A stretch of DNA of 64,000 nt from Mizuhopecten yessoensis (Eukaryota): contig NW_018408683.1 in assembly GCF_002113885.1 (NCBI RefSeq), forward strand, positions 242,144 through 306,143, read 5' to 3'. Position numbers and translations under genes: made by a program. A model generated the notes under the pieces. That model ran no database searches. It was not told where the DNA came from and saw only the letters and a list, made by a program, of their open reading frames with translations. Positions 4,663 through 61,400 of the stretch are shown here, piece after piece. The first letter of the stretch is position 1. Every line of letters starts with the position of its first letter.

Positions 4663-5477
4663 ATCAAATAAATAGTATATGACTGTTGCACAATACATAC
4701 ATAAAAAACAATATATCACATCTTCACATTTGACAAACAATTTCTACGATTTTCCTGTCAAATAGGCTCATACAGACATGATTTTCTGATGTCAAACATG
4801 TTCACTCAGAAAATACATGTAATACAGCCAGACAAGAATGGCTGAACATCACATTTACCTTGGAGGACTGTTGGTTGAATCCATCTATTATCTCCCCCAC
4901 TCAAACATGACAAGCTTTCTTACTGACTCCTATACAAAATCTTTGTAAACATCAACATTACTCTCTCTAATATAGCACTAACAGTTTGTGAAGATTATAT
5001 CTTTGCTGTATCTTGTGGCATGAAAAACATAACAGGAAAATAAAAACTTTGTACCTCTAATACTGAATCAATTCAGGGAATCAGCTGTAAGTAGTGTCAC
5101 GCACCAAAAATTTACATCCCACAAATATGTCACAGGAACAAAGCCGTTACGATTAGACCCAGCAAGATTAAAGAGTTATACAGCATATTTTATATCCAGA
5201 ACTTCTCAACGCATCACAGCACCATCCAAGATAACGTGGGTTACTATTTTGATATTCAGCACTATCTACAATATATCCCCACATTAACAAATTGGAGATA
5301 CTACCTCTATATTATAAAGGTGATACCTAGTATCCAGATTGTTATACCATTAATAACAAAATCCTTTTCTTAATCGACACATACTGCTGCATCTAGTATT
5401 CTATGGTCAGAATAATATTTCGAGTAGATCTGTCAGCCATACTGTGTTAAAAGCTACCAATCCCCACCCAAGGTTAT

Positions 5478-7570
5478 AGCCATTCATTACTAGCCGGTAC
5501 TATGGCCATTTGTTACTATCTGTACTATGGCCATTTGTTACTAGCTGGTACTATGTCCATTTGTTACTAGCCGATACTATGTCCATTTGTTACTAGCCGG
5601 TACTATGACCATTTGTTACTAGCCGCCACTATGACCATTTGTTCCTAGCCGGTACTATGACCATTTGTTACTAGCCGGTACTATGGCCATTTGTTACTAG
5701 CCGCCACTATGGCCATTTGTTACTAGCCGGTACTATGGCCATTTGTTACTAGCCGCCACTATGGTCTTTTGTTACTAGCTGTACTATGGCCATTTGTTAC
5801 TAGCCGGTACTATGACAATTTGTTACTAGTCGTTACTATGGCCATTTGTTACTAGCTTGGTATGTCCATTTGTTACTAGCCGGTACTAAGGCCATTTGTT
5901 ACTAGCCGGTACGTACTATGACCATTTGTTACTAGCCGATACTATGTCCATTTGTTACTAGCCGGTAATATGGCCTTTTGTTACTATCTGTACTTTGGCC
6001 ATTTGTTACTAGCAGGCACTATGACCATTTGTTACTAGCCGGTACTATGGCCATTTGTTACTAGTTGTACTATGGCTTTTAGTTACTAGCCGGTACTATG
6101 GCCATTTGTTATTAGTTGTACTATGGCCTTTAGTTACTAGCCTGTACTATGACCATTTGTTACTAGCCGGTAATATGACCATTTGTTACTAGCCGGTACT
6201 AAGACCATTTGTTACTAGCCGGTACGTACTATGACCATTTGTTACTAGCCGAAACTATGGCCATTTGTTACTAGCCGGTACTATGCCCATTTGTTCCTAG
6301 CCGGTACTATGGCCATTTGTTACTAGCAGGTACTATGACCATGTGTTACTAGTCGCCACTATGACCATTTGTTACTAGCCAGTACTATGACCATTTGTTA
6401 CTAGCCGGTACTCTGGCCATTTGTTACTCGCCGGTACTATGACCATTTGTTACTAGCCGAAACTATGGCCATTTGTTACTAGCCGGTACTATGCCCATTT
6501 GTTCCTAGCCGGTACTATGGCCATTTGTTACTAGCCGCCGCTATGACCATTTGTTAGTAGCCGGTACTATGACCATTTGTTACTAGTCGCGACTTTGACC
6601 ATTTGTTACTAGCCGGTACTATGCCCATTTGTTCCTAGCCGGTACTATGGCCATTTGTTACTAGTTGTACTATGGCTTTTAGTTACTAGCCGGTACTATG
6701 ACCATTTGTTTCTAGCCGGTACTATGACCATTTGTTACTAGTCGCGACTTTGACCATTTGTTACTAGCCGGTACTATGCCCATTTGTTCCTAGCCGGTAC
6801 TAAGGCCTTTTGTTACTAGCCGGTACGTACTATGACCATTTGTTACTAGCTGATACTATTTCCATTTGTTACTAGCCGGTAATATGGCCTTTTTTTACTA
6901 TCTGTACTTTGGCCATTTGTTACTAGCAGGCACTATGCCCATTTGTTACTAGCCGGTACTCTGGCCATTTGTTACTCGCCGGTACTATGACCATTTGTTA
7001 CTAGTCGCGACTTTGACCATTTGTTACTAGCCGGTACTATGACCCTTTGTTACTAGCCGGTACTATGACCATTTGTACTAGTTTTACTATGGCCTTTAGT
7101 TACTAGCCGGTACTAAGGCCATTTGTTACTAGCCGGTACTATGCCCATTTGTTCCTAGCCGGTACTATGGCCATTTGTTACTAGTTGTATTATGGCCTTT
7201 AGTTACTAGCCGGTACTATGGCCATTTGTTATTAGTTGTACTATGGCCTTTAGTTACTAGCCGGTACTATGACCATCAACTCCTAGTTGAGGTATTAGCC
7301 ATCTGTTACAAGATGAGGTTATAACCATTCATTATAAACCGAGGTTATAACCATCCATTATTAGCCAATACAATTGTCATCCGTTCCTTGCCAAGGTTGT
7401 AGCCATCCATTACTAAGGTCACAGCCTTCCGTTACAAGCCGAGTTTCTAGCCATCCATTATTAGACAAAGTTACAGCCATCTGCTGCTAACGGAGGTTAT
7501 AGCCATCCTTTTCTAGCCGATACTATAACACTTGTGACTAGCTAAGGTTATAGCCATCCATTACTAGCCA
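5478..7570. repeat. 26-bp minisatellite array (~80 units) starting at the VPS18 stop codon
   Basis: Unit GCCATTTGTTACTAGCCGGTACTATG. Degenerate units at 7280-7570 grade into the last codons of VPS18. Confidence 0.95.
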
Positions 7571-10500
7571 GGTCCTCTTCCTCCTCCTCGATAAACAGCT
7601 TTTCCACAGACCTACACAGGGAAACAAAGGGGAGTAAAAACCACACAATCTATACATTTTTATATATAAATAAAATAAAACGCTGAAGACTAAATTTCGC
7701 AATTACTTTTGCCCATCTTGGGGCTCTTCAGGCGATTTTTTTTTTATATATATAAATGTATAAATAGAAGCTTTCTTTCTGAACCATAGAGTTTGGTTGA
7801 TTTACAGCCTCAAGCTCTACACCCAATGTTGCTTTCCACAAATAATTTGAACTAATGTGTAAATTTAGATTATTGATAACATCAAGGCATTTCACAAAAA
7901 CGTTTTACTGTACACATTAAGTAATTACATACCTTAACATCCAGTAAGTTGACAGAGTAATGTGAAGACAATACAATCTACATAGTGTCTGTACTCACCT
8001 CACCATCAAATCTCCACAGTAGATACACTCAGAGGCCACCAAATCATCCAACGCAGCCTGGCCAAAATAAAAGACATTAGTTATCATCCTCACTTTAAAA
8101 CCTACCCTAAAAGAAGGTCAGAGTTGGTCAACTATCACCCTAATCTCAATAAGATGATCAATTAACAATCACTCAGAGAGCTAATAATGTTTTGAATTTT
8201 TATCTTGAACATGGCTTCTTAGAATGATTTCCATTTCTTTGATAGTATGACCTTGACCTTGGTGACTACATACAGGTATATCATGAAGTTCTATGTCCCT
8301 GACCTGATATCCATTATACTGACATTATGACATTGACCTTGGTATCTAGATATGTCATGAAGTTCTATGTCCCTGACCTGATATCCATTATACTGACATT
8401 ATGACATTGACCTTGGTATCTAGATATGTCATGAAGTTCTATGTCCCTGACCTGATATCCATTATACTGACATTATGACCTTGACCTTGGTATCTAGATA
8501 TGTCATGAAGTCCTATGTCCCTGACCTGATATCAATTATACTGACATTATGACCTTGACCTTGGTGACTAGATATATCACAAAGTCCCATGTCCCTACCC
8601 TGATACCCATTATACTGAGGTTATGATCCTGACCGTGGTGACTAGATATGTCATGAAGTCCTATGCCCCTACCCTGACAGTCATTATACTGACATTATGA
8701 CCTTGACATTGAATAAGAGACGTATTACTTGGTTGTATTTCCCTTTACCTTGATCTCCATTATTTTTAGGTTGGGACCTTGCCCTTGGCGACTAGACATA
8801 TTATGTGGTCCTACGTCGTCGTGCTCTGCCAACTTTCTCTGTAAGTCTTCCACATGTGATCGCTTCTTGTTTGATAAATTAGGTACAACCTGACAAACAG
8901 ACAATACCAATTATTTAATGAGATTAAACACATCAAGTCAACAGAATTCATGTGTCTGATATTTCAAGAATACCTTACAGTGCTCTCATTTTGCAGGACC
9001 AAACTCTTATAGCATCAAACTGGAACCAAACTCACTTCCCTTATTAAGCACTCAGATTTACAAAATTGTCTGCATTATTAATTTTTTAGAATTGATGGAC
9101 TTATTTCTTCGATTGTAAAGACTTACCTCCCCAGATTTACAAAATTGTCTGCATTATTAATTTTTTAGAATTGATGGACTTATTTCTACGATTGTAAAGA
9201 CTTACCTCCCCTATTAAGCAGTCGGAGTGAAATTTATGTTGACATGGAAACAGGTAAAATCCACGGGTCATCAGAGGGAAACCACAGGCAGCACATTTGT
9301 CCACTGACTTCACAAATGCAAACCTGTAAGGTGTTATATTTGGGAAATATGTTGCATTGCCAGATATGACTTTCACATGTACAAAGCTAAAAATGCTGCT
9401 ACATCATTCTACAGTATATAGATTTGTATATTTGTATCTGGTACTCATCAACAGTTGCTCAATTCTGCTTTCTGTTGGTGTGCTTCTCAGGCTATGTGTT
9501 AATCTGTCTAAAATGTATTGATGTTACTTTTTGTTGGATATCTATGTAAAAACATAGATAAAAAGAACATGTAATTAAAATATAAAATACGTTCTTACTT
9601 GTTGCGAAAGCCCTGAATTTCCTTCCTGATCTCCTCTGCACTACCTGTCGCCTCGTCCATCTCCTCCTTGAGAGCTTCTATATGTTGGTTATACTCCTTC
9701 AGTGAGGTGATGATGGCATCCTGTCAAATCAATACCATTATTTAGTGCCCTCGATATTTCCTCATCACTAATTTCTCTCTGAGCTACACAAGTGTAAGCC
9801 TGGTCATACTGTAAACTGTAGACGAAAGCTACTCTTGGTTATATACCACCATGTTTTTCTAATGTAGATACTCACTTGCATCTTAAACAGAAATCCAAAT
9901 AGTTTTACAACTGGCTTTGACTGAGATTGGTTATGGTAGCCAACTTGTTACAAGGTTGGTCAAAGTAGCCTATTTGCTGAAGGATTGGTTACAATAGCCT
10001 ACTAGTTACTGGATTGGTCATGATAGCATACTAGTTACAAGCCTAGGATAGTATGATGGTCTGCTTCCTACTAGAAAGGAAGTGGTAGCCAACTTGTTAA
10101 ATGGTAGTGTTAGATACTACCATAGGTTGTTTCCACCTTACTTTAATGTTTGTAAGAATTGCTCCACTGTTTAGAAATGAATTAAAGCTACACTGTGAAA
10201 CGAGAGATCTTATAGCCTGCATACCTTGAAGTGGTCAATGGTGACAAAGTCAGGAAAAAATGGCAGGATGTCTTCTATTTTGAGGAGGTCACAATCATGG
10301 AGGAACTCCATTGCTCTCTTGACATCTTTCTCCTCCTCCACCACATGTCGGGCTATAAATAGACCAGGTTCAGACCATTCATGTTAATAGCTAGTGGGAA
10401 CATGTCTGGCTATAAATAGACCAGGATCAGACAATTCATGTTAAGAGCTGGTGGGAACATGTCGGGCTATAAATAAACCAGGATCAGACAATTCATGTTA

Positions 10501-13500
10501 AGAGTTGGTGGGAACATGGGCTATAAATAGACCAGGATCAGACAATTCATATTAATAGCTAGGGGGAACATGTTGGGCTATAAATAGACCAGGATCAGAT
10601 AATTCATGTTAAGAGTTGGTGGGAACATGGGCTATAAATAGACCAGGATCAGACAATTCATATTAATAGCTAGGGGGAACATGTCAGGCTATAAATAGAC
10701 CATGATCAGAAAATTCATGTTAATAGCTAGGGGGAACATGTTGGGCTACAAATAGACCATAATCAGACAATCCATGTTAAGAGTTTGTGGGAACATGTTG
10801 GGCTATATAGACCACGATCAGACAATTCATGTTAAGAGTTGGTGGGAACATGTCGGGCTATAAATAGACCATGATCAGACAATTCATATTAAGAGTTAGT
10901 GCAAGTTGGGCTATAAATAGACCATAACCAGACAATTCATGTTAATAGCTGATGAGAACATGTCATGCAATAAATAAACCACGATCAGACAATTCATGTT
11001 AAGAGCTGGTGGGAACATGTCGGGCTATAAATAGACCAGGATCAGACCATTCATGTTAATGGCTAGGGGGAACATGTCGGGCTATAAATAGACCAGGATC
11101 AGACAATTCATGTTAATAGCTGGTGGGAACATGTCGGGCTATAAATAGACCAGAATCAATTCATGTTAATAGCTAGGGGGAACATGTCGGGCTATAAATA
11201 GACCAGGATCAGACAATTCATGTTAATAGCTGGTGGGAACATGTCGGGCTATAAATAGACCAGGATCAGACAATTCATGTTAAGAGTTGGTGGGAACATG
11301 GGCTATAAATAGACCAGGATCAGACAATTCATATTAATAGCTAGGGGGAACATGTCAGGCTATAAATAGACCATGATCAGAAAATTCATGTTAATAGCTA
11401 GGGGGAACATGTTGGGCTACAAATAGACCATAATCAGACAATCCATGTTAAGAGTTTGTGGGAACATGTTGGGCTATATAGACCACGATCAGACAATTCA
11501 TGTTAAGAGTTGGTGGGAACATGTCGGGCTATAAATAGACCATGATCAGACAATTCATATTAAGAGTTAGTGCAAGTTGGGCTATAAATAGACCATAACC
11601 AGACAATTCATGTTAATAGCTGATGAGAACATGTCATGCAATAAATAAACCACGATCAGACAATTCATGTTAAGAGCTGGTGGGAACATGTCGGGCTATA
11701 AATAGACCAGGATCAGACCATTCATGTTAATGGCTAGGGGGAACATGTCGGGCTATAAATAGACCAGGATCAGACAATTCATGTTAATAGCTGGTGGGAA
11801 CATGTCGGGCTATAAATAGACCAGAATCAATTCATGTTAATAGCTAGGGGGAACATGTCGGGCTATAAATAGACCAGGATCAGACAATTCATGTTAATAG
11901 CTGGTGGGAACATGTCGGGCTATAAATAGACCAGGATCAGACAATTCATGTTAAGAGTTGGTGGGAACATGGGCTATAAATAGACCAGGATCAGACAATT
12001 CATATTAATAGCTAGGGGGAACATGTCAGGCTATAAATAGACCATGATCAGAAAATTCATGTTAATAGCTAGGGGGAACATGTTGGGCTACAAATAGACC
12101 ATAATCAGACAATCCATGTTAAGAGTTTGTGGGAACATGTTGGGCTATATAGACCACGATCAGACAATTCATGTTAAGAGTTGGTGGGAACATGTCGGGC
12201 TATAAATAGACCATGATCAGACAATTCATATTAAGAGTTAGTGCAAGTTGGGCTATAAATAGACCATAACCAGACAATTCATGTTAATAGCTGATGAGAA
12301 CATGTCATGCAATAAATAAACCACGATCAGACAATTCATGTTAAGAGCTGGTGGGAACATGTCGGGCTATAAATAGACCAGGATCAGACCATTCATGTTA
12401 ATGGCTAGGGGGAACATGTCGGGCTATAAATAGACCAGGATCAGACAATTCATGTTAATAGCTGGTGGGAACATGTCGGGCTATAAATAGACCAGAATCA
12501 ATTCATGTTAATAGCTAGGGGGAACATGTCGGGCTATAAATAGACCAGGATCAGACAATTCATGTTAATAGCTGGTGGGAACATGTCGGGCTATAAATAA
12601 ACCAGGATCAGACAATTCATGTTAAGAGTTGGTGGGAACATGGGCTATAAATAGACCAGGATCAGACAATTCATATTAATAGCTAGGGGGAACATGTCAG
12701 GCTATAAATAGACCATGATCAGAAAATTCATGTTAATAGCTAGGGGGAACATGTTGGGCTACAAATAGACCATAATCAGGCAATCCATGTTAAGAGTTTG
12801 TGGGAACATGTTGGGCTATATAGACCACGATCAGACAATTCATGTTAAGAGTTGGTGGGAACATGTCGGGCTATAAATAGACCATGATCAGACAATTCAT
12901 ATTAAGAGTTAGTGCAAGTTGGGCTATAAATAGACCATAACCAGACAATTCATGTTAATAGCTGATGAGAACATGTCGTGCAATAAATAAACCATGATCA
13001 GACAATTCATGTTAATAGCTGATGAGAACATGTCGTGCAATAAATAAACCATGATCAGACCATTCATGTTAAGAGTTGGTGCAAGTTGGGCTATAAATAG
13101 ACCATAATCGGTCAATTTATGTTAATAGCTGGTGGGAACATGTAGGGCTATAAATAAATCATGATCACACAATTCTTGTTGCTTATGGAAATTTGTATAT
13201 TGATATATTAATATATTGAACAATTAATTAGAGGTTGCAAAATGTCGTTAAACAATGATCAAGCTAATCACCTTCTGAACAACTGGGCCCAGATCTCTTA
13301 TGCTACACTTTAAACATTACAATCAATGAAAGCCAAATTCCATCGCATTATAAAAAGTTTTATGCTTCATAAACAAGTGAAACCTAGATCAACTGACCTA
13401 TCCTGAGCCAGAGTTTCTTTCGGAGGTCTAAATCATCCTCATCTGGTTTGTCTGCCTGACTTTTGGCCAATTCAACATCCACCTGTAATCAAAACAAAAA

Positions 13501-16500
13501 CAATTTTCATGCAATTGATATTTTATGCACTTGACCATGCCAATCAGCATGTAAATTAAACAAAAATAGAAAACAATAAAGGAAGCTCCAAATTCAATGT
13601 CATTTGACAGATGTGCAAGGACTACTCATATAAAATGAAAGTCATGACATTAGGAAATGATGACCCTCAGAAGTAGAGTGGCCTTTGGTGCGACTTACAG
13701 CCAGGGCGAGGTCAACAGCCTCCTCATACAGTCCCATCAGGGAGTAGATGTGGACACAGGCCTTCTTATGATCATGTTCTGCACACAAGCGCAGGGCATA
13801 CTTCAGGTCATAACAGATACTCTCCGGGTCCTGTCAACACAAACATGTTAATTTATGCCTTAGTCCATATATAAACATGGATCAAGTATATGCTTTCCGA
13901 AGTTAAAGAGTAGAGAAAATAGGGAATTAGCAATATAAGCTTCTGATTAAGTAATACCTGGCACTCCACTTTATCATGCAGGTGAATATGGCAAATAAGA
14001 TAAAATTGTTTCCACTGGAAAAGAAGTATTTTATACCTAGCAAAATGATGTTATTTGACTTTGACCTCTGACTTTCCAACTCAAAAACCCTGCATCTGTA
14101 GGTAGGCCATCAGTTTGTCAGGTTGTAGTAACACTTTACTTCTCATGAAATACTTACTGTACCCTGCATCTGCAGGTAAGTCATCAGTTTGTCTGATTGT
14201 AGCTTGGCATATAGAGACAGGAGGTAGTTGTGGATAGCTTGCTCCTTGTTCTGCATTTCCTGAATACAGAACTCAAGGTAGCGTATTGCCTCGTTACCCT
14301 GAAGGTATAAAAGGTATAAAAACAACATTATAAACATCTTACATCGTCTAACACTTCCCGAAGATCAAACCAAGATGCCTAAGTGGCCTGTATCCCATGT
14401 TATTTAGTGTTTTGTCAGGGTCATGAGAGACAAATTTGTTTTGAATTCTGCTACATAAAGATTGACAAACATTTGTATTAACTGAAATCAAAATTGGCTT
14501 GGCGGAATTTGTTGAAGAACCAATTAGTAGTGGGGTTTTTCAAAGAAACTTGATGTTAAAATATTGATAGTTTATAACAAATTTAGTGTGAAGTGTTTGG
14601 ATGTCAAATAAAATATAGACCAGTTGGAAAGATACCCTAAGGAAGCTGCCACTTTTCTTTACAAACAAAAATAAAGATAAACCAGAAAACTTCACGAGGT
14701 CAAGAATGCCCCCTCTCCCTGGCAAAGTTGTGTCATTGGTTGACAGATTTTGTGACCTTGGCCTTGACCCTAATCCCTGAAATAGGACCTTGGTTTTATA
14801 GTATTTTGTTTAACATCCTTTTTAACAGCTATGGTCATTTAAGGACATAAAAATAGGACCCCGTTTTAGTTATTCTCAGACTTGACCTTTATATAAAGTT
14901 TGATCAAAATCTGCTAGGAAAAATGCCACTAGAGTGATGTTCCTGAAAAATTTCTATAAATAGTAACAGTGACCTTGGTCTTGAACTTGAAGCCCTAAAA
15001 TACAAACTAAATTGAGGTATTCATGTACTTGACTTATGTAAATAGTTGGATCGAAATTAGCTAAAAATGAAGTTACTAGAGGGATGAGAATGAATTGAAA
15101 TCGGTTGGACATTGGTAGCACTATATGCTGACCTGCTGTCTGTATCTGTTATGGTCGTACTGTACGAGAGCCGGGATGAGACGGAGGGGTTCCAGGTTTC
15201 CCTTCTGTTTGATCCAATCCGTGACCGTCTCCTGTGGGATGTTCTGCATCAACAGGGGAGAGAACTTGTAGAATAGGTCCACATCTCCCGAACACTGCAA
15301 ATAATGGCAGACAAATCAGTGAGGCTATTAAACACTTCAAGTAAATGATTTGGTGAGAACTTCAAAGGCTGATGAGACATGATTTGTGAGTTCTTCAAAG
15401 GCTGATGAGACATGATTTGTGAGAACATTGAAGGCTGATGAGACAATTTTTGTGAGAACTTTTAAGGCTAAGGAGACATGACTTGTGAGAACTTCAAAGG
15501 CTGATGATACATGATTTGCGAGAACACTGAAGGCTTATGAGACAATTTTTGTAAGATCTTTGAGTGCTGATGAGACATGATTTGTGAGAACATTGAAGGC
15601 TGATGAGACATGATTTATGAGAACTTTGAAAGCTGATGCGACATGTTTTATGAGATCTTTCAAGCAGATAAGAGTTACATGTTTTGTGAGAATTGTAAAG
15701 GCTTATTAGACTTAAATCTTCTGTGAGAATTTTGAAGGTTGATGATACTTACATGTTTTGTGAGAACTTTGAGGGCATTCTTGTATTCATCATGTTGCAA
15801 ATAGTGTGTAATCACCTTCTCAAAGTCTGAAATGTATGATGAACAAAGCCATTATAGATACGTTGATGTACCTGAAATTTGAAATGACAGCACAGCTGTA
15901 GGTACAAAGTTTGTTTCTACAAATCAAGTTACAAAGCAGTAATAATTCCCTAGTTCGAAAAATCAATAGTCTTGAAAAATGAAACACCAATTACAATGCT
16001 TACCTTGCATTAGGAAGGCGAAGAAGACCATATCCTCCACATCTCCGTGACTGGCAATGAGGTCGTACACCACACCACGATTATTACTCACACACTCCTA
16101 CAGTATAAAGACCAGGGTTATCTCCCATTAACACTGCAACATACACTGTAATATACATTATGCCAGGTGCCACAATTAATATTTTAAAACTTCCTGATCC
16201 TGAACCTGTGGCTTGGTAGATGAACTTAACTTGACCTAGAAATACACCCAGATATACACAATTAAGTACTGACCTTTACTCTGCCTTGGTTAAGGAACAT
16301 TCGGAACTGGTCTTGTAGGTCCTCATATTCCTTTGTTTGGTCGCGGCCAGCCTCCTTCAGCTCGCCAAGCTGGTTCAGATAAATCTCTACCAGCCAGGTC
16401 ACCAACATGGTCAGCTGAGTCTTGTCCTGTATATACAATTTACACAGAAAAATCATGAGTTCAACTTGATGTGTAAAATATTCTTCCCAAGTCACCTCAT

Positions 16501-49400: not shown

Positions 49401-52400
49401 GGTAGAGCATCGGGCTGGAGAGCCAAGTGTTGCGGGTTAGAGCCCCAGCGCCGACACTATCTTTATCACTATTCCTCGTCCTATTACAGATATACCTTTG
49501 GGTTGCTGCTTATTAAAATTAAATGAAAATAATACAATACATTTCAATATGATTAATCAGATGATATGTATTTGTTTTCATCAGTATCACCCAGCAGTGC
49601 CCAACCTTCGCAAGTCACAACAAAACCGCCAACGACTATAACAACAAAAGTGACAACACCTGGAACAACACCCTCATCAAGTTAGTTTTTATGTTACAAT
49701 AAGGTGAATAATTGTATGACTTAATTCTGTCTTACAATCAGGAGATGGTGGTGTTTGTGCATTCTGTATCAAAATCAGAAGGAAGTGGTGTGTGACTTCA
49801 TTCTGTTTCACCTCACTTGAATGTTGAAGCAGAGCACTGTAACGCCTGACTCCACCTTGTGTATTGGAGAACTGAATAGGAAAACGACAACTGATGTGAG
49901 TGTAACCTTGCTTTCTGTGTGGAAGCTGGCCTCAAGTTTAGCCACTCAGCCTGAATTTTGCACAATCACGAATACATCGATGTGATTTCATTCTGTCCCA
50001 AATCAGGGAAATAGCATTGTTAATTCATTTTGTCTCATTACCACGGTGGTAGCAATATGCGTGTCAAATTTGTGGTGATGGCAATTTGACTTTATTTCGT
50101 CTCATAGTAAGGAAGAGATATGTAAGTGTTTTTTAATTAGATGTTAGGATGAGTGTACTGGAATGAACTTTTCTGTCTGTTTGTCTGTCTGTGGATAAAA
50201 GGTAGTCCAGACAATTTCTACTTAACTGCAACGCTGATTTCAAGAAAACTTTAAATGCATGATCAATACATAATGGACTTGTACAACTAATATTTAATTT
50301 TCAATTTTGACCTTTTCCTCAGTGGTTATTACCCATTTTTTACTTGTATACATTAGTCATTTCAAACCCTGTCCAAACAAATTATCTGACTGACAATAAA
50401 CTTTTTGGCAATTTGTAGGATTCAAGATGGTCACCACAGTCTCTGATTGACTGACTTGAATGTTTTTGGTCAGCTTTGTTGATATTGGTTATTAAGCCTC
50501 TGACTTACAGTTCTAGTTTTAACAAGACTGGTTTTGCAGAAATGTACTTTTTGTTAATATCTTCATGAAAAGTTTGGGTTGAATTCTTAGGTGTTGTCTA
50601 GGTTTCAATGTTAATTTTATGTATAAAGAAGATTCCTGTCTTTAGGAATATGTTTAATGCCTTCTCTGCACACAAAAGGGCACTCAACTCAAATGTACCC
50701 TTTAATGGTAATCAATACATTCGTAGGGAGAACATACATGTAGTACTTATTGAGGCACAGAATACTTCCTTATCATCGTTGTCTGACAAGAACCTTTGAT
50801 GATAACACTGCTGAAAGGTGTACTTGACTTTGAAATTGACATCCTTGGCTTAAAACCATCACATTTACTACAAGATATCTAAACTAGTATTATATTAGGA
50901 AATTAGTTCACAACAATTTGGTTTGAATAATCAAACTGGAACCATTAATTTACAATAATTTAACAATTATGCTTATAGGTACAAACTCAGTCACATGCAA
51001 TTTTGACTATAACTTCTGTGGTTGGACAAATCCTAAGAATGATGATTTTGATTGGACAAGGCAGAGAGGGTCCACTGCAAGCTCCCACACTGGGCCCAGT
51101 ACTGACCATACTTCTGGACGTAAGTTAATCACAGTGTTATCACTAGATGCACATATAACAAAGAATCTTAATTTGGATTTATGGTCACAGCTTTATTGAA
51201 TAGATATGGCGGGCGGTCTGCCAATAGACCATAATGGCACACCATCAATAAATTTTAATTTCAACAACAATTTAATTGATTGATGCTGGGAAACAGTTCT
51301 CAACCAATTAAGCAATACAATTCAAATCAATTAATTATTGAAGAAAAAAAGTATTTAAGCTAGTAAATCTTTGATAAACTTAGCCTGATTTCACTCTGAC
51401 GGCTCTCTTCCAAATTGGTTTTCATTTAACAAGGGAGATAACCCCTTATTACTTCCACCAAGTAGGCTTCAATCATGGTTGCACAACACCAATTCAGCAT
51501 GCGCCCTCTGATAACGGAACTATATGGTGTTTTGCCATAAGTACTATTATATGTGTAGATCAGTCGAGGATTTCATCCTCATGTGTAATTCATCATTTTT
51601 GGTAATAGAAATATCACCATGACAACTTAGGAACCACAATCCTCTGCATACATTCTCTGACTAGATCTGTTGTAGCATTAACAAGTGTGTTACTTTGTCA
51701 TTATTATCTCCGCCAGTATGGTGTCTATATATATGCAGCAGGAAGTAGGAGAAGACCATCCTGGTCTATATAAAGTAATGAGAGTGCTATACTGTCTGAC
51801 CAGATACGATGCAGACCTGTCAAGTTCTTAAAAATTCTGATCTAGGTCATAACTAATAAATAGCAGTAGGTCATAGCACCATCAATGTAGGTCATTGTAT
51901 AAAGTAAAGTTTTGTAATGGATTACATGTGATAAAATTTAGAAATTTTACTTTGTCAACAAATTCAATAAAATCAATTGATTATCATTTCATCAATTTAA
52001 AATGTATTCTGTTTAACCAGAGATTAGTATTATAAACATTTTGATAAATGATACCCTCATTTAGTGAAATCAAGATAATATAGCATAATGCTTCCACCAA
52101 TTTTTTTGTACCTGGTATGATGTGATTGGGTCATTGACATTCTATCAAATGCGGTAAATTTCAATCATTTATAGAAACCCATTTCATTATTTCAAAACTT
52201 CTTTTCTTCACGTTTGTAAATATACATTTGAAAAGGTTTGTTGAATAACTTATTGATAATCCTTGTCAACCAAACGCTTGCTAATCAAGTTACTGATAAT
52301 CTTGTTTAATCAATTGCTTGTATTTAGAGGTATTCCTGGTCAACTACAAACTACTTAATCAATTTGTTGATATGTTTTAGTGTGTCTTAATGTCTATGAA

Positions 52401-55400
52401 CTTGTATTATTATGTAGATGGCTACTACATATTCACGGAATCATCAAATCGTCATGCCAATCAGAGGGCATTACTACAGAGCATCCTTGTGAGCCAGACT
52501 GGGCCTCATTGCTTGACATTCTGGTATCATTTGTATGGATCGAATATTGGAACCCTCAATCTGTATGTACAGACAGGGGCAACTCGTGGCTCCCCAGAAT
52601 GGACTCGTTCTGGTGAGCAAGGAAACCTCTGGAGGACATCAAATATAACCTTCACACCTACTGCTCCATTCAATGTGAGTACCAGGGTGAAATATGGTAA
52701 AGAAAGAGTAACATATCTGCTCCTTCAATGTAAGTGCTAACTTATAATGAAAACATTTAGCATCATCTCCAATCCATTCAATGTAGCATACATCATTTGC
52801 CTCCTGCTTGTGTATACATTGGAGATGCTTTGAGCCAAACTGTAAACATTTGCTAACTTTCCAAACCAAATAATTTAAGCAATTAACATTTACTACTTCT
52901 TCAATTTGAAAAAAATGTTATACCAAAATTTGGTTCCTCTATCAGTTTGACGTGGATTTTGAAAGTGAATTAATGAATTATTTTATTTCCATTTTAGCTC
53001 ATATTTGAGGGCGTCATGACAAATGGTTACCGTGGTGATATATCTATTGATGATGTATCTCTGACAAGTGGGACATGTTCAGGTACTGGTTCACTAGCAC
53101 AAACTATCGAATGTATTTCATCAAGTACAAGTTTGTAAACACAAAGTTTCTAGTGTGTTATATTAGGCACTGGTTCATAAACGCAATGTATCTAGTATGT
53201 CACATATATCTAATGTATCAAGTAGTATTTATCACAAACACAAAGTATCAAGTGTGTGACATCAGGTTCAGGTTCACTACACAAAATACAAGTACAACAA
53301 CAAGAACTGGTCCATAAACATAAAATATCTAGTGTGTTGGAGAGTTTATCTGCTTCTGGCTCATTGGCAATGAGTACATTCAGGTAAAAGCGTTTTCATA
53401 TCTAGTGATAAAATCAGATAAAACCTAGAAATGGTAAGGGAGATAATCATAAGCAATAAGGGAGATAATCATAAGCAATAAGGGAGATAATCATAAGCAA
53501 TAAAGGTTTCATTTGTTGAATCCATCTTTCATTGAATAATTTTTAATGAAATAAATTAATGTTTGTTAAAACGAGTGCTAATATATGCTAGTGCTTTAAT
53601 TGGTGTGAAGGGTCATCTGGGATGAGCGGAAGGACATGTGGTTTTGAGGACACTCATATCTGTGGATATACACAGGACCATTCTGATGTGTTTGACTGGA
53701 CAAGAAAATCAGGATCAACATCATCTACTGGCACCGGACCATCCAATGATCACACATATGGAACCAGTCAAGGTAAGGCATCTGATCCTTGAGTGAGTCC
53801 AATTACTGAACCAGTCGAGGTAAGCTTTCAGCCCTCTAGTGAGCCGAACTAAGAACCAGTCGAGGTAAGCTTTCAAACCCTCTAGTGAGCCGACCTAAGA
53901 ACCAGTCGAGGTAAGGTGTCAGATCCTTGAGTAAGTCCAATTACTGAATCAGTTGAGGAAAGCTTTCGAACCCTCTAGTGAGCTGACATAAGAACCAGTT
54001 ATGATAAGAAATCCTCTCGTGAGATGAACATGAACCAGTCTAGTTTAGTCACCAGACCCTATAGTGGGACAACATAGGAACCATTCAATATAAGGCACCA
54101 GACCCAACAGTGATCACACATAGAAACCATTCAATATAATGCATCAGGGCCCGTAATCATGAAACCGTTTTCATGCTCAGGCATGGATTCTGTGCTTAAA
54201 CCAGTATACTTGTAACTGGCTAAAATCAGACCTTCTGATGAGTCCACATATGGATTAGACAATGTAATCCATTAGACAAATACAGGACCAGTTAAGGTTA
54301 GGCATCAGATAATCCATACAAAGTAAGAAACCAGATTTTCTAATAACACATTGCTGTTTATAGGTGTGTAAAAGAAGTGCATTGATTAGGTTGCCTTACA
54401 AGCATCAGCTGTAGGGAATTTCCCTTTAGCTCAGCTGTAGAGCATCGGGCTGGAGAGTCGAGGGTTGCAGGTTCGAGGCCCAGCGACGGCACTATCTTTA
54501 TCACTATTTCTCGTCCTACTACAGGTGAATACTACTTGTAAGTTGTTGACTGTATGTAGCTACTTGTATATTGATGCTATACCTGGTTGATTGTAGGCCA
54601 TTATATGTACATTGAGGCATCACTGCCGCGGAAACTAGGCGACACAGCACGACTTATCTCGCCATCTTACACTGACAGCCAGGCCATGTGTGTCCAGTTC
54701 TACTACCATATGTATGGCAACAGTGCAGGGGCGCTCAACGTGTACATACAGGTAAGAGTAAGATCACTGTTGTTTTTACACCAACTGGTGTAAATGTATG
54801 TAGCCGAACTGGACTGGGTCGATTGCTGTTGTTTTTACACGTCGACAACCAGTAAGCTCAATTAGTTGAGCATCCATTTAGAATTTAGAGGGTGTTGGGT
54901 TCGTATCCCAGTCTGGCCATTGCATTTCTCTTCTCTTGTTACAAAATTTGCGAGCTTGCCAACACTTGTTTCAAGCGCTGGGTTAATACTTCACAAGGGG
55001 ACATCCAAATCTGGATTGTAGGTGATTCTGTCTTAGGGGACAAAGACTTAGAAAAAGGAGGGAGGAATGTAGCATAACTGGACTGGGTCAATTATTTGGT
55101 GATAAGGTAGCTCCATTTGACTAATATCATTGTTGTTTTACACACACGTTGCCATAGAACACTGTGGTATTATACAGACTTTAACATATTATATATTGAC
55201 TAATGTCACTGTTGTTTTTACACATCCTAATACATATATATCTTGACTAAGATACTCTGTTTTACACATTTTCGTGTTGATAAAGATCACATTGCTGAAG
55301 ATCACTATTATTTTGACACAGACTTATATGAATATATCACAAATGTTTTTAAAAATACTTCTGTATGTATATATAACATCACTGTTGTTTCCACACAGAC

Positions 55401-58400
55401 CAATGGACAGTTGGGAAGAGCTGGTTTTACCATGTCAAACAATGGAGGCAATAACTGGCACCTTGGGGAAATAACAGTCACATCTACAACAGCAAGTGCA
55501 GGTTACAAGGTAGCTTTTCAGTCATAAAACAGTTGTAGATGCATATTGCACACTCATATTTCACCAAAACGGCTGGTGTTTGACTCTGAGCTTGAGTGGG
55601 AAAAGGCAGTGGGTCACCTGCCCGACCACAGGACTTTTTCTCTGGGTACTTTGATTTCCTCCAACACTATTTTTCTACAGGCTTTCTTACAGGCCAGAAA
55701 GAGTACCAATGAATATTAAAAGTAAAAACTTGTTTCTTAATATTCCAGTCCCTTTTGGCATAAAGACCCGGTTTTTGTATCAATAACGAGGTACATAGGT
55801 ATCATTGCGACCTCTGTGGGAACTTAAGACGATTTATTATATTGAATTAGAAAATAACATGTAATATTTAGTTATTACTTGTAAGCTCACCTGGTACAAA
55901 AGACTAAGATGAGCATATTTAAGATCCAGGTGAGCAATACAGGCCCTGAATTTGAAATTCTATACGAACTTGGTAGATTGTTTTTGTGCTTATCAATGAA
56001 GCGTAAAATCTCAAACCAACTTAACAGGTTGTCTTTGAGGGAGTACGAGGACAAAATGCAAGAGGGGACATCGCTATTGATGACATCAAATTCAAAACCG
56101 GACGCTGTAACAACCCAGGTAAACAATATTTTAAGATGAAAAATGTTTTATATTACATGTATAAATTAAAAAATTGTTGTGTCTATATGTGACAATATAT
56201 AGAATAGCTGTCTTTCTATGTCGTTATATATAATTAGAGTGGTCTTTGATGCGACAGGTGTAATAGTTGTGTATGTATATGTTTTTGTGTAGAGTTTAAA
56301 ACTGTATGTATATGTGTTTTTGTAGAGTTTAAAACTATATGTATATGTTTTTGTGTAGAGTTTAAAACTGTATGTATATGTTTTTGTGTAGAGTTTAAAA
56401 CTGTATGTATATGTTTTTGTGTAGAGTTTAAAACTGTATGTATATGTTTTTGTGTAGAGTTTAAAACTGTATGTATATGTTTTTGTGTAGAGTTTAAAAC
56501 TGTATGTATATGTTTTTGTGTAGAGTTTAAAACTGTNTTTGTGTAGAGTTTAAAACTGTATGTATACGTTTTTGTGTAGAGTTTAAAACTGTATGTATAT
56601 GTTTTTGTGTAGAGTTTAAAACTGTATGTATATGTTTTTGTGTAGAGTTTAAAACTGTATGTATATGTTTTTGTGTAGAGTTTAAAACTGTATGTATATG
56701 TTTTTGTGTAGAGTTTAAAACTGTATGTATATGTTTTTGTGTAGAGTTTAAAACTGTATGTATATGTTTTTGTGTAGAGTTTAAAACTGTATGTATATGT
56801 TTTTGTGTACAGGAGAGTGTGACTTTGAGACAGGACTTTGTACCTGGGCCAACACACAGCAAGGAGATCAGTTTGATTGGACGATTCAACAGGGGCAAAC
56901 ATCGTCTGTGTCCACTGGTCCAAGTACTGACCACACAGTGGGGGACCCAACAGGTAACGACAGTGAGGGAGGGCTTTATACACTGTCTGTCTGTAGACAG
57001 AATCCTGTCTTGTTTACTCCCACTGTTCAGTCATCCAAATTTTTTGATACTTCACTGTTGTAGCTTAGACACTCTGAAATTGAGCATCTTTGCGTGTCAT
57101 TTTTTAATCTGGCAATTTTTTATGGGATTTGATACGCCTCTTTAACACCGTTATTCACCAAACCTTTTTCAACTGACGTCTAAAGTTTATTGAAACTCGA
57201 CTGATATAATTTGGCTCCACAATCTGAAGTTAAGCACTGAGCTTATGTTTTGGGTTTGGCTATTTTGATGGGATTTATTCCTGTTTTGTATAATCCTTAG
57301 GTAAAATTTCTTTAATCTTATTTACATATATGTTATTTCCAGAATATTGCTCTTCATGTTTTTAACACATTTTTATTAAACTTGCTACACATTATCATTA
57401 CTTAACAAATCTTTACCCAGTCCATTTCTTTATGTAAAGGTAATGCATACCCCTTTGGATGAAAGTACCGTGGTAATACACATCCTTTTGGTTTGAATAA
57501 TGTGATTTCCTTTGGCTACAAGTAATGTACTTTATATATAGTACAAGTTGTACAGATTCCTTTAGGTAGAAGTAATGCATACTCATTTTACTACAGTTAA
57601 TATGCATTCCTTAGAGCAAGTAATGTACATTCCTTTAGATAAGTGTAAAGCACACACGATTTTCATTCATATTTCATTGATCAACTAGTTAAACTCCAGT
57701 TTTTCTTCGTTATGAAATGATTTGAAGGGTGAAAGGAATAATGTGATATCTCCTAGTGCATTTATACTTGTATTATAGGTCACTACATGTACATAGAAAC
57801 ATCTGCACCGCGCTTGCAAGGGAACATTGCCTGGCTAGTGAGTGAGACTTTCCCACCAACGTCAGCATCTGGGCGCTGTATCTCTTTCTGGTACAACATG
57901 TATGGCCAGACCATTGACACACTCACAGTCCTTGTTAGGGCTCAAGGTCAGTTCAAAGTCAGGTTCAAGAGAAATATTTAGGCATGGCAAAATGTAACTT
58001 GATGTTCACTGTTATATGCCTATATTCCTCAGAATCAGACATTCAATGTGTTGAAGTAACTGGTCAGTATCAGGAGTAACGAGTCAATTTTGGTTTTAAG
58101 GTCTTGGAGGTCATTGGTCAAAATCAGGTTGGTATTGTCATAATCAAAGGTCACGCAATATCCTTAGTTTAGGTCACAGAGTGATTTGTAATGACGCTGT
58201 TAACAGGGGTTGCTGATCAGGCCATTTGGAGTCTGACTGGTAGCCAAGGACAACAGTGGATGTTTGCCAACGCCCCGATGAGCATGGCCAGTACAAGCTA
58301 CCAGATTGTTTTCCAGGGGCGCAGAGGGTCTGCTGTCACTGGTGATATCGCCATCGATGACATATCCTTCACAGAGTCCAGTTGTGGAGGTGAGCTTTAG

Positions 58401-61400
58401 ATAGTTAAAATATATCAAGATTGCATGATTGGTATGATAATGGAAATTTAGGATTCCTTGAATGCTGTGAAACCCTTTTATATGAACAATCCTGTTTTAA
58501 CAGAATTGATTACAATCAGTATAACAATGCCATTTCAAAATACCTATTCAAGATAAAAAAAAACCAACAATGTTTATAATATTCCTAATTTAGAACTTTG
58601 CTGCTTTCAAGAAAAGTGATGAAATTATATATCGGCTACCCCAGTTAATGTGTGTTGAGAGTTAAACCAATCCATACTCACCCTTTCTTAAGTCCTATAT
58701 GACCTTTTTCAGTTTCAGTTTGAAGTACAGTGTGTAGTATTTGGTTACTTATTTAACATCTAATGTTAGTGTTGTTTGGTTCAAAATGACTTTAATAATT
58801 ACAAAAACGAACACACCTAGTATCCCTGTGTTCATGTTTACGTTACGTTTCTTTAATAGTGAGACCAAGCCAGGCCCACCCTATCAACGGCCCTACAACC
58901 CTGCCCACTGCCAGTACAACACCCAGTGTCCAGGGCTCCTTCAACTGCAGCTTTGACACTAGCTTCTGTGGCTGGACCCAGGACCACACTGACAAGTTTG
59001 ATTGGACAAGACTACGGGGGCGGACTCAGAGTGTATCAACAGGCCCCAGCGCTGATCACACGAGTAAAAGTGAGTTGTCTTCTCGTAAAACAAGTTTTTT
59101 CTGTTGGCTGATTCTTCTATGACTTCTTTCATTTATTTCAGCAATTTAAAGCTTTTTTGCCTCAGTCTTAAATTATGAATTAGTTAAGACATGGGTTTAA
59201 GTTTTCTGAAATAGATGAACATGAAAATTTTCTGTAGTCTCGAAGGCTAAAAAAGTCAGACTGGCCAATGCCATTTGATTATCTGGAAAAACTTTTGGAT
59301 TAAGTGGATTTTTTAGATTTTACTCCTAGGTAAGGAAATAATAGGTAAATACTAAAATGTAGTGTTCATGTTTTCAAATGTTAACTTGGATATTGCTTAT
59401 ATCAGTATAGTGCAAAATTAACGGTTTTAAATTTGAAAATATTGTTTTTAAAAATTAGATATTTTTGCTGAGATTGAAGGCTAATGTGTAGCTCCTTTGA
59501 TAGGGGGCTATTATGTGTACACGGAGGCGTCTACTCCCAGAGTCCGTGGTGACAAAGCCCGACTGATCAGTCCTGATGTAACAGTCACTGGTACACAAAC
59601 CAAGTGTCTCACCTTTTGGTACTTCATGATGGGACGGAATGTGGCCCAGCTCAATGTCTATGCCAAGAGTGGTCTCGCACTACCCACTACCCCAGTCTGG
59701 AGGCGAAGTGGTAGCCAGGGCAACCAATGGTTGAAGGCTCAGGTTGACCTTACTGCCAAATCTGTCTTCAATGTAAGCATTGACATTAGGTTTCACTTTT
59801 TTTAATATTTTTAATAAAAATATACTTTGCGCATATCCCCTTGTAAAGACACATTTCTTGATTATATTATAATCCATAGACTATGATATCACATCATGTA
59901 TGTGAATCACTTCACTTTCTGTTATTTCATTTTCTTCTGAACACTTGGCTGCTTTTGCATAAAGCCAGAAAATATTCTATGAATGCACCACTTTGGCTTG
60001 ACGTGGAATTTTCTGTCAAATAAATATAAAAATAACCCAAGAGTTATGTACGCTTTATTCCCATATACTAAATGATAACATTTCTTCAAATATGTATATA
60101 TGTTGATCTTAATCTATGTAGAAATACTACAAACTAAGAATATTCAGCTGATGAGTTTAGCCCGGCATGGTGCTGTACCACTGGATTTAAATGAGTCACA
60201 TTGTATTTACAAGAAATTAGACTGATCAGGGAATGGGATCAACAAACACTAACATTGTTACGACGATGTAACTTTCTTTTTGTGAAGTTGTTCATGTTGT
60301 AGTTACTCTGGGTGAATTGCAAACACTTGTGTCAAGGTTTTATTATCCTGTTGTTATTTGTATGTTTATACAGATACATGTGGTGTAGGTGGTGTTGGAG
60401 AGTACGTGTGAGGTTGCCTATTGTAATGTTTATATCCAATGACCTGTCTGTTGAAGGTGGTGTTTGAGAGTACGTGTGAGGTTGCCTATTGTAATGTTTA
60501 TATCCACTGACCTGTCTGTTGTAGGTGGTGTTGGAGAGTACGTGTGAGGTTGCCTATTGTAATGTTCATATCCACTGACCTGTCTGTTGTAGGTGGTGTT
60601 TGAGAGTACATGTGAGGTTGCCTATTGTAATGTTTATATCCACTGACCTGTCTGTTGTAGGTGGTGTTTGAGAGTATGATAGGTGGTGCCTATGGTGATA
60701 TAGCTGTGGATGATGTGGGCATCTCTGATGGCAGTTGCACACAAGGTAGGTATTGAGACAGGTCACATTGATTCAGCTGATCCCGCGTTACATTTATCCG
60801 TATTATCACTGACCCTTTATATACTGATCCCTCAGAGTAATGATTGATATTGTTTTGACAGGCCCTGTTGCAATGTCATGTGATTTTGAGAGCACTACAG
60901 TGTGTGGATTTCAACAAGACCATACTGACCAATTTGATTGGACAAGGGGGAGTGGCTCGACTGGCTCAAGGGGAACTGGACCAAGCAATGACCACACCTA
61001 TGGAACATCCAGAGGTCGGTGTGCCATGTATAGGCCACCTACATAATGTTACGAAAAAATCCAAAAACACTTATAAACTGTGATAGATAGTATATATGGC
61101 AATTGTTTCGTTAAAAAGGAAATTATTTGTAATTGATGTTAATGATCATTGTAGTATATAAGTTTAATTGTATACAAATATAATTGTTGTAGCATATAGG
61201 TTATATATGTAGCTACATGTTTTAATCCTACCAGAAATAATTTGTCATTGTTTACTTACATTACCAACAAATTTAAATGTTCACTTCTTCTCTGATAGGA
61301 CATTACATGTTCACGGAGGCAAGTGGGCGTCATCCAGGAAACAAGGCCCGCTTAATCAGCCCCATCTACAAAGGTCCTAGTACACCCATGTGTCTCAAGT

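What the first reader, a model, noticed from the sequence alone, without database searches (positions are those of the whole stretch)
5478..60697. Window-wide pattern: tandem repeats are seeded from the host genes' own exon boundaries
Seen in sequence: about 16 tandem arrays or local duplications contain or abut the neighbouring exon edge and splice site and extend into the intron or UTR. In VPS18 these are the stop codon (5478-7570), donors (8245-8817, 9030-9223, 14087-14203, 15335-15775, 25488-25548) and acceptors (10343-13175, 22288-22460, 25603-25860, 28088-28132). In the MAM gene they are acceptors (45110-45524, 54763-55406, 56268-56820, 60381-60697) and donors (53070-53340, 53745-54310). 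Only a few arrays (e.g. 23864, 31120, 35700) lack an annotated exon. The exon copies encode family-conserved residues (ARHV, GHY, VVFE, DHTYGT, WL*), so the direction is exon to repeat. Units are unrelated to each other (26-79 bp), so this is not one transposon family. Inference: either a junction-biased duplication process (splicing/R-loop-coupled slippage or template switching) or selective retention of junction duplications. It builds introns full of decoy splice sites and may drive intron growth. I do not recall a described system of this density.
Basis: partly seen in the sequence, partly recalled or inferred. Interest (0 to 1): 0.82.

Follow-up and report, generated by a model that had tools for sequence, protein, structure and literature searches.

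The report
Exon-edge minisatellites ("mirages") in scallop-like genes
Many tandem repeats in the introns of these two genes really are built from copies of the neighbouring exon edge and its splice site, a kind of repeat already described as "mirages" in amphioxus, and here they are about two to three times more common than random duplication would give.

Summary
I modelled VPS18 (28 exons, minus strand) and 27 MAM-gene exons (plus strand). Of the 16 claimed sites, nine hold copies of exonic sequence scoring above all 5565 cross-intron controls, and one (45519) is borderline. Two arrays reach the acceptor or stop 7 nt short of it without exon letters. Four are weak or degenerate. The exon-to-repeat direction is supported by residues shared with orthologues and paralogues. 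The units are unrelated to each other, and the three arrays that were searched cleanly occur nowhere else in the genome. The assembly gap lies inside VPS18 intron 12 and hides no exon.

The interpretation needs tempering. The collapsed introns are short (median 330-520 nt), so uniform tandem duplication already predicts that 19-33% of arrays straddle a junction. In the window I observe 6 of 11 strong arrays (P 0.02-0.08). With 94.5 kb of unseen downstream sequence the count is 20 of 38 against 7-9 expected (P about 1e-5). That is a real but modest 2-3-fold excess of unknown cause.

The phenomenon is already described: "mirage" minisatellites in amphioxus and the human F7 intron-7 VNTR. This is a new member of a known kind.

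The parts
7548..28409 (-). VPS18 coding region, 28 exons (X1 28409-28326 to X28 7611-7548), 982 codons plus stop
   Evidence: Pfam Pep3_Vps18, Clathrin and RING hits on single exons. Exon-by-exon tblastn with full-length relatives P0139 and P0084. Splice sites and phases.
18630..19354 (.). Assembly gap inside VPS18 intron 12; no exon is lost, the intron length is uncertain
   Evidence: Orthologue residues 382-408 and 408-428 flank the gap without a break, and the phases 2+1 fit.
5475..7570 (-). 26-bp minisatellite (about 80 units) whose first unit holds the last 23 nt of the VPS18 coding sequence including the stop (7550-7548); the rest lies in the 3' flank
   Evidence: score 49 against a control maximum of 31; exon-proximal units are the most diverged. 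The C-terminal Trp is shared with orthologues.
8246..8810 (-). 74-bp array (6 units, 8246-8711) plus the founding unit, which is the last roughly 45-60 nt of exon X26 and its donor (last exon base 8749)
   Evidence: score 35, probe -45..+12; all 6 copies keep GT. Unique in the genome.
9030..9220 (-). 79-bp unit in 2 copies (98% identical) plus an older partial copy, each starting with the last 6-18 nt of exon X25 and an identical 9-nt donor site (last exon base 9206)
   Evidence: Unique in the genome.
10343..13180 (-). 57-bp array (about 50 units, higher-order period about 671 bp); every unit holds the acceptor and the first 10 nt of exon X23 (first exon base 10352, codons A-R-H-V)
   Evidence: 41 gapless copies; 46 of 51 keep AG. 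Only self hits in the genome.
14087..14203 (-). 1.5-copy local duplication (period about 64 nt) of the last 33-42 nt of exon X20; the second copy lies in intron 20 (last exon base 14158)
   Evidence: score 59.
15345..15776 (-). 33-bp array (about 13 units) that fills intron 18; its units derive from the last 24 nt of exon X18 plus the donor (last exon base 15753), and the decoy donors are weaker than the true one
   Evidence: the array translates like the exon end; score 37.
22299..22459 (-). 54-bp array with 3 units, ending 7 nt upstream of the exon X7 acceptor (22291); it holds no exon letters
23863..24255 (.). 59-bp array with 6.7 units in the interior of intron 6; not related to any exon edge (a counter-example)
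25605..25841 (-). 57-bp array with 4.2 units (96% identical); each unit holds the acceptor and the first 16-22 nt of exon X5 (first exon base 25620)
   Evidence: score 53; all copies keep AG.
25488..25548 (-). Single 15-nt look-alike of the exon X5 donor 36 nt downstream; not above control
   Evidence: score 25; control 99th percentile 24.
28088..28132 (-). Roughly 22-nt duplication of the pyrimidine tract and AG just upstream of exon X2 (first exon base 28085); intronic only
40402..63261 (+). 27 exons of a giant multi-MAM-domain gene (9 domains, each split a/b/c; the gene runs on for more than 110 kb beyond the window)
   Evidence: PF00629 matches.
45099..45535 (+). 67-bp array (period 67/98/165) ending 22 nt before exon b2 (first base 45519); its units resemble the acceptor plus the first 6-17 exon nt (F-E-G-H); borderline
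   Evidence: 7 gapless copies with up to 6 mismatches; score 30; only 2 of 9 keep AG.
53077..53338 (+). Degenerate 42-nt repeat (63-76% identity) starting about 6 nt inside the end of exon c4 (last base 53082)
   Evidence: (score 25).
53773..54147 (+). Two different 46-bp arrays (53808-53999 and 54050-54147), both derived from the end of exon a5 (last base 53772); the second holds up to 43 exon nt ([13 protein letters not shown])
   Evidence: (score 49).
54760..55414 (+). Five scattered 65-90% copies of the acceptor tract of exon d5 (first base 55399); at most 2-3 exon nt
56270..56812 (+). 33-bp array (about 16 units, 97% identical, with a single N at 56537) running up to the AG of exon a6 (first base 56813); no exon letters
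60384..60676 (+). 68-bp array with 4.3 units (96% identical); each unit holds the acceptor and the first 16 or more nt of exon c7 (first base 60661, V-V-F-E-S)
   Evidence: (score 64).

Best explanation
These are 'mirage' minisatellites. A local tandem duplication of 26-80 nt happened to straddle a coding boundary (a 5' splice site, a 3' splice site, or once the stop codon). It was then amplified on the non-coding side by slippage or unequal exchange.

The gene is not harmed because only the outermost copy stays joined to the exon body: the most upstream donor or the most downstream acceptor. The other copies lie in the intron or 3' flank as silent pseudo-sites. That they are silent is inferred from the human F7 and amphioxus experiments, not shown here.

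Much of the window-wide pattern is geometry. Introns without their arrays are only about 330-520 nt (median). Duplications wholly inside exons are removed by selection. So a fifth to a third of surviving arrays should contain an exon edge. On top of this there is a 2-3-fold excess whose cause is open: junction-proximal birth bias, better survival, or an intron interior that is partly young DNA.

Shown here: the arrays, their exon content, their local uniqueness, and the excess. Inferred: the mode of amplification and the silence of the decoys.
For:
- The copied letters code for residues conserved in relatives.
- The units are mutually unrelated, and the 57-, 74- and 79-bp arrays are locus-specific.
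- Donors, acceptors and a stop codon are all involved, as expected for duplications at any boundary of constraint.
- Uniform-duplication nulls give 2.5-3.6 of 11 arrays in the window and 7.2-9.4 of 38 overall, against 6 and 20 observed.
- Exon-proximal units are the most diverged in two of three long arrays, as reported for mirage clusters (PMC3087553, section 16).
- F7 IVS7 shows that the first of several identical 5' sites is the one used (PMC1557585).
Against: - The excess over the uniform null (P about 4e-6 to 4e-5 combined) is not explained by geometry.
- Decoy-bearing arrays should if anything be more harmful than inert ones.
- The same exon end seeded two distinct arrays at least twice (53808 and 54050 in the window; 40508 and 41904 downstream), which hints at a local hotspot.
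- There are no expression data to show that the decoys are silent.
- The out-of-sample stretch belongs to the same giant gene, so generality across genes rests on VPS18, this gene, and unchecked first-reader notes.
Confidence: 0.75

Rival explanations
1. A junction-coupled mutational process makes exon boundaries true hotspots for tandem duplication. Candidates are polymerase pausing at splice sites, R-loops, or replication conflicts at co-transcriptionally bound spliceosomes. Mirages would then be its footprint and a main driver of intron growth.
For: There is a 2-3-fold excess over uniform nulls in two data sets. The same exon ends were seeded repeatedly. Many further arrays end within 2-25 nt of a junction.
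Against: The excess is modest and depends on how much intron interior counts as target. The unit borders lie 6 to 45 or more nt inside exons with no fixed offset. One array is seeded at a stop codon, where no splicing occurs. Interior arrays also exist (23863; several downstream). No direct evidence bears on the mechanism.
Confidence: 0.2
2. The arrays are carried by transposons or belong to dispersed satellite families, as with MITE- or Helitron-linked satellites of bivalves, and only happen to resemble exon edges.
For: An 85-bp dispersed repeat lies next to the far end of the 57-bp array (window 13212-13296). Two other loci hold 26/27-bp arrays that share a 12-13-nt core with the 26-bp unit at 68% identity.
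Against: The 57-, 74- and 79-bp arrays give only self hits in 988 Mb. The units are unrelated to each other. The exon-like parts code for family-conserved residues and sit in register with the true junction. By my rough estimate, 68% matches between 26-bp arrays are expected by chance among the thousands of arrays in a genome of this size.
Confidence: 0.02
3. The arrays are assembly artefacts of a short-read, gap-rich assembly.
For: The genome is in 82,659 contigs. A single N lies inside one array (56537) and a 725-nt gap lies in intron 12. Copy numbers of long arrays are therefore uncertain.
Against: The units differ by substitutions (59-98% matches) and show higher-order structure. The arrays are flanked by unique sequence and leave all 28 VPS18 exons in frame. 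The same kind of array recurs at 25 junctions.
Confidence: 0.03
4. The arrays are kept by selection because they act, for instance as splice-site decoys or U1 landing pads that tune splicing, or as raw material for new exons and introns.
For: Most copies keep GT or AG (46 of 51 at exon X23, all at X5, c7 and X26). The amphioxus authors proposed intron gain from mirages (PMC3087553).
Against: GT and AG are kept about as well as the rest of the unit. At b2 only 2 of 9 copies keep AG, and at X18 the decoy donors are much weaker than the true site. The arrays differ between paralogous MAM introns, so they are young and not conserved. No expression data are at hand.
Confidence: 0.05

Closest known systems
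'Mirage' minisatellites of amphioxus (Adh3, troponin C, globins BflGb6/9, PGBD5). Sources: Canestro et al. 2002, cited in PMC3902484 as ref. 68; Ebner et al. 2010, PMC3087553; Pavelitz et al. 2013, PMC3902484.
   Same: They are tandem repeats whose unit spans an exon-intron boundary. Both 5' and 3' boundaries are affected. Units are 10-160 bp. Many but not all copies keep AG or GT. The cluster edges are less homogenised. The mechanism is stated to be unclear.
   Different: This is a different phylum (a bivalve-like genome, not a cephalochordate). The density is far higher here (about 9% of 287 junctions, with arrays of up to 50-80 units and 2.8 kb). One array is seeded at a stop codon. Splicing, haplotype and somatic instability were not testable here.
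Human F7 intron 7 37-bp VNTR, whose first element spans the exon 7 boundary (Borensztajn et al. 2006, PMC1557585)
   Same: The authentic donor is followed by identical pseudo 5' splice sites in tandem, as at exon X25 (an identical 9-nt site 79 nt downstream), a5 and X26. That work gives an experimentally supported reason why such arrays are tolerated: the most upstream site is the one chosen.
   Different: F7 is a single locus in a mammal, and only donors are involved. Here acceptors are equally frequent, and their tolerance is not explained by 5'-to-3' scanning.
Intron gain by tandem duplication of an AGGT-containing exon segment (Rogers model, as discussed in PMC3087553)
   Same: A duplication that includes exon sequence and splice signals adds intronic DNA.
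   Different: Here the introns already exist and are lengthened. No new intron position was shown. The predicted match between the intron's 3' end and the upstream exon end was not seen for intron 18.
Ordinary intronic minisatellites
   Same: Period, copy number, divergence and higher-order structure are the same, and interior examples are also present (23863-24255).
   Different: More than half of the strong arrays contain letters of the adjacent exon.

Membership tests
Mirage minisatellites (amphioxus type) | A tandem repeat whose unit spans an exon-intron boundary | tested here: met
   Nine junctions score above all controls and one is borderline. Direct reading confirms it. About 15 more junctions are positive downstream.
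Mirage minisatellites (amphioxus type) | Both 5' and 3' exon boundaries can be duplicated | tested here: met
   In the window there are 5 donors (X26, X25, X20, X18, a5) and 4-5 acceptors (X23, X5, c7, b2).
Mirage minisatellites (amphioxus type) | Many but not all units keep AG/GT signals | tested here: met
   46 of 51 copies at X23, all at X5, c7 and X26, 9 of 11 at X18, 6 of 10 at a5, 2 of 9 at b2.
Mirage minisatellites (amphioxus type) | Concerted evolution inside the cluster, with cluster edges left out of homogenisation | tested here: inconclusive
   Exon-proximal units are the most diverged in the 26-bp and 33-bp arrays but not in the 57-bp array.
Mirage minisatellites (amphioxus type) | Regular splicing is not disturbed | not testable with these tools
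   No transcript data are available. Only the outermost copy keeps the reading frame.
Mirage minisatellites (amphioxus type) | Length instability between haplotypes or in somatic tissue | not testable with these tools
   Only a single assembly is available.
F7 IVS7-type donor VNTR | The first repeat element spans the exon end, and the authentic 5' site is the most upstream of several like sites | tested here: met
   This holds at X25, X26, a5 and X18. The true site is the only one contiguous with the exon.
Transposon-borne or dispersed satellite arrays | The same unit is present at many other loci of the genome | tested here: not met
   The 57-, 74- and 79-bp arrays give only self hits. The other arrays gave no hits among the scored candidates, but those searches were swamped by nearby dispersed repeats.
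Intron created by tandem duplication (Rogers model) | The 3' end of the intron repeats the end of the upstream exon, and the intron position is lineage-specific | not tested
   No gene structures of relatives were at hand. By eye, the 3' end of intron 18 does not resemble the end of exon X18.

The most novel reading that the evidence does not exclude
Exon boundaries in this genome are true mutational hotspots for tandem duplication, through a process tied to transcription or splicing. Mirages then arise genome-wide at thousands of junctions and are a leading cause of intron growth in this lineage, and perhaps in other hyper-polymorphic marine invertebrates such as amphioxus.
Probability: 0.25. 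Interest if true: 0.8.

Novelty: new member of a known kind. Interest (0 to 1): 0.5.

Why it matters
Mirages have been reported for only a handful of amphioxus genes and one human intron, and their origin is called unclear. Consider a genome in which about 9% of junctions in two unrelated genes carry one, and in which they make up about a quarter of one gene's intron DNA. Such a genome would turn an anecdote into a data set. With annotation, long reads and RNA-seq one could measure three things:
- whether junctions are hotspots;
- how spliceosomes ignore dozens of perfect decoy sites, acceptors in particular;
- how much such arrays contribute to intron growth or gain.

There is also a practical side. 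These arrays are traps for gene predictors and for short-read assembly.

Tried and rejected
- A strict gapless 12+12-nt junction probe found only 8 sites and missed arrays with indels.
- My first Smith-Waterman run let the probe overlap its own target and gave trivial scores of 50. I discarded and repeated it.
- A back-of-envelope estimate of an 8-fold enrichment did not survive proper nulls. The conditional and unconditional uniform-duplication models give 2-3-fold.
- Transposon or satellite origin is rejected for the arrays that could be searched cleanly. The 68% matches of the 26-bp array to two other arrays share only a 12-13-nt core and are probably chance.
- Transposon content of the introns could only be bounded from below (4-10%).
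I redid it from TRF output on file.
- Canestro et al. 2002 could not be opened, so it is cited through PMC3902484 and PMC3087553.
Exons were handled one by one by reference, and only lengths and phases were summed.
- Nothing in the window looked human.
Full report
What is in the window. The window is G000:C5356:242144-306143 of a 987.6-Mb assembly in 82,659 contigs. From memory, that size and contig count match the Yesso scallop assembly; I did not test this. Two genes matter here.

VPS18 lies on the minus strand. Single exons hit Pfam Pep3_Vps18, Clathrin/VPS and RING models. A search with the RING exon returned full-length relatives of 961-985 aa. I aligned these to the window exon by exon with tblastn. 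With splice-site and phase scoring and direct reading of the 5' end, this gives 28 exons. All are GT-AG and sum to 2949 nt in one frame.

The plus strand from about 40.4 kb carries a multi-MAM-domain gene. Each domain is split into exons a, b and c with phases 1-0-1, giving 27 exons in the window. PF00629 matches confirm the family. I built and searched no joined spliced sequence; only exon lengths and phases were summed.

The gap. The N run 18630-19354 lies inside VPS18 intron 12 (19661..18087). Exon X12 ends in phase 2 and X13 begins with the missing base. Two relatives align across the pair without losing residues: P0139 382-408 then 408-428, and P0084 371-395 then 395-415. No exon is hidden there. 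Only the intron length is uncertain, and no claimed array touches the gap. A single N at 56537 sits inside the 33-bp array, so its copy number is uncertain.

Checking the observation. TRF reports every large array at the stated coordinates. Direct reading of the minus strand showed four things:
- The 79-bp unit begins with the last codons of exon X25 and an identical donor site.
- The 74-bp unit matches the last roughly 60 nt of exon X26 plus its donor.
- The first 26-bp unit contains the last seven codons and the stop of VPS18.
- The 57-bp unit ends with the acceptor and the first 10 nt of exon X23.

For an objective test I took, for each of 107 boundaries, 45 exonic plus 12 intronic nt. I aligned this probe to the rest of its own intron, with every other intron as control. 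The 5565 controls had a 99.9th percentile of 27 and a maximum of 31. Nine boundaries scored 35-64, with exon letters inside the copies: c7, X20, X5 acceptor, the stop codon, a5, X23, X18, X25 and X26. The b2 acceptor scored 30.

Two arrays reach the acceptor without exon letters: 56270-56809 runs up to the AG, and 22299-22459 ends 7 nt short. Four claimed sites are weak: a 15-nt donor look-alike at 25488-25548, a 22-nt intronic duplication at 28088-28132, and degenerate repeats at 53077-53338 and 54760-55414. So roughly 10 of the 16 claims are solid, 2 are abutting arrays, and 4 are marginal.

Direction and origin. The copied exon letters encode residues that relatives share:
- I-A-R-H-V-V at the start of X23, which is identical in P0084;
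- a Trp within one to three residues of the C-terminus in most full-length relatives;
- the G-x-Y, V-V-F-E and D-H-T-x-G motifs that recur in all MAM repeats.

The exon is therefore the source. The array consensus units are unrelated to each other apart from two neighbouring intergenic arrays. The 57-bp, 74-bp and 79-bp arrays have only self matches in the whole genome.

The 26-bp array matches two other 26/27-bp arrays at 68% through a shared 12-13-nt core. By my rough estimate, that is what chance would give among the many arrays of a genome this size. Searches for the remaining arrays were swamped by nearby dispersed repeats and showed no array matches among the scored candidates. A transposon or satellite origin is therefore rejected where it could be tested.

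Is it more than chance? Against a null of no duplication, obviously yes. The fair null, however, is that tandem duplications arise anywhere, that those inside exons are lost, and that the rest survive. With each array collapsed to one unit, the introns are short (median 327 nt in VPS18, 522 and 434 nt in the MAM stretches). A unit of 26-80 nt then straddles a junction in 19-33% of cases.

In the window, 6 of 11 strong intronic arrays (TRF score 200 or more) contain exon sequence. The expectation is 2.5 when placement is uniform over the gene, or 3.6 when uniform within the array's own intron. This gives P 0.02 and 0.08.

I modelled 90 further MAM introns and repeated both tests. There, 15-16 of 180 junctions scored above the 99.9% control level. 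Nearly all of them have copies that lie inside the protein-homology segment. In the same stretch, 14 of 27 strong arrays contain exon sequence against 4.8-5.9 expected (P 3e-5 to 1.5e-4).

Combined, the figures are 20 of 38 against 7.2-9.4 expected, P 4e-6 to 4e-5. The excess is real but only 2-3-fold. Four caveats apply:
- The extra stretch belongs to the same giant gene.
- Two pairs of arrays share one exon end.
- Young transposon DNA in intron interiors would inflate the null's target. I could only bound that fraction from below, at 4-10%.

Anatomy that bears on mechanism.
- Donors and acceptors are hit about equally, and one array starts at a stop codon, which is not a splicing site.
- The exon part of the unit ranges from 6 to more than 45 nt with no fixed offset.
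- Most decoys keep GT or AG (46 of 51 at X23; all at X5, c7 and X26). At X18 the decoy donors are much weaker than the true site, and at b2 only 2 of 9 keep AG.
- Units of 74 and 79 nt would shift the frame if a decoy were used. The 33-nt unit would not.
- In the 26-bp and 33-bp arrays the exon-proximal units are the most diverged from the array consensus; in the 57-bp array they are not.
- The same exon end seeded two different arrays at a5 and at one downstream exon. At X25 an older roughly 92-nt duplication was followed by a 79-nt one.
- Junction-derived arrays make up about 4.1 kb of the 17.9 kb of VPS18 intron DNA. Intron 22 is 93% array and intron 18 about 90% (coordinates).

What is known. 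Tandem repeats spanning exon-intron boundaries were named 'mirages' in amphioxus Adh3. They were later seen in troponin C, globin and PGBD5 genes. Their units are 10-160 bp, both boundaries can be affected, most copies keep splice signals, splicing is normal, and the mechanism is admitted to be unknown (PMC3087553 section 16; PMC3902484).

The human F7 gene has a 37-bp VNTR whose first element spans the exon 7 boundary. Experiments there showed that the most upstream of the identical 5' sites is chosen by a scanning-type process (PMC1557585). My literature searches found no report from molluscs.

Verdict. The arrays are real, locally born, exon-seeded minisatellites, that is, mirages. The exon-to-repeat direction and the 'not one transposon family' point are supported. 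The idea of a junction-specific process is neither needed for most of the pattern nor excluded, because a 2-3-fold excess remains unexplained. The claim of no described precedent is wrong in kind, although the density and the phylum are new.

Noticed in passing
G000:C5356 about 283-420 kb (window 40.4 kb onwards; loci L003-L032): The MAM gene is gigantic. PF00629 matches run for about 140 kb on one strand. At C5356:400.7-411 kb about 22 MAM domains lie in one uninterrupted 3566-aa open frame, whereas upstream every domain is split into three exons.
   Followed up: partly
window 25152-25390; 14868-15129; 13212-13296; 7650-7753: These are dispersed repeats inside VPS18 introns. One is a roughly 235-bp element with more than 3000 first-look candidates at 83-89% identity. 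One is a roughly 260-bp element at about 70% identity. Two are shorter, of 85-100 bp.
   Followed up: no
window 10343-13180: The 57-bp array has a higher-order period of about 671 bp, with 98% identity between blocks.
   Followed up: no
window 31163-34191 and 35748-37009: These are large intergenic arrays: a 37-bp unit in about 80 copies at about 50% GC, and 31/50-bp units that are related to each other. I could find no exon next to them.
   Followed up: partly
window 56537: A single N lies inside the 33-bp array, so an assembly join falls within a repeat.
   Followed up: no
downstream stretch, positions 61125-61259 and 61544-61669 (C5356:367268-367812): A whole MAM 'c' exon with its donor is duplicated about 420 nt apart, with further partial copies of its end.
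   Followed up: no
window 49254-49436, 54361-54531 (minus strand), 48526-48827: Open frames with near-identical translations recur in different MAM introns. They are probably copies of one short interspersed element.
   Followed up: no
C5356:202144-242143 (L039, L046, L038, L045): The 40 kb upstream hold a 450-aa reverse-transcriptase-like frame, an ankyrin-repeat frame just before the window, a Bcl-2-like exon with an NWGR motif, and a dozen long-period arrays.
   Followed up: no
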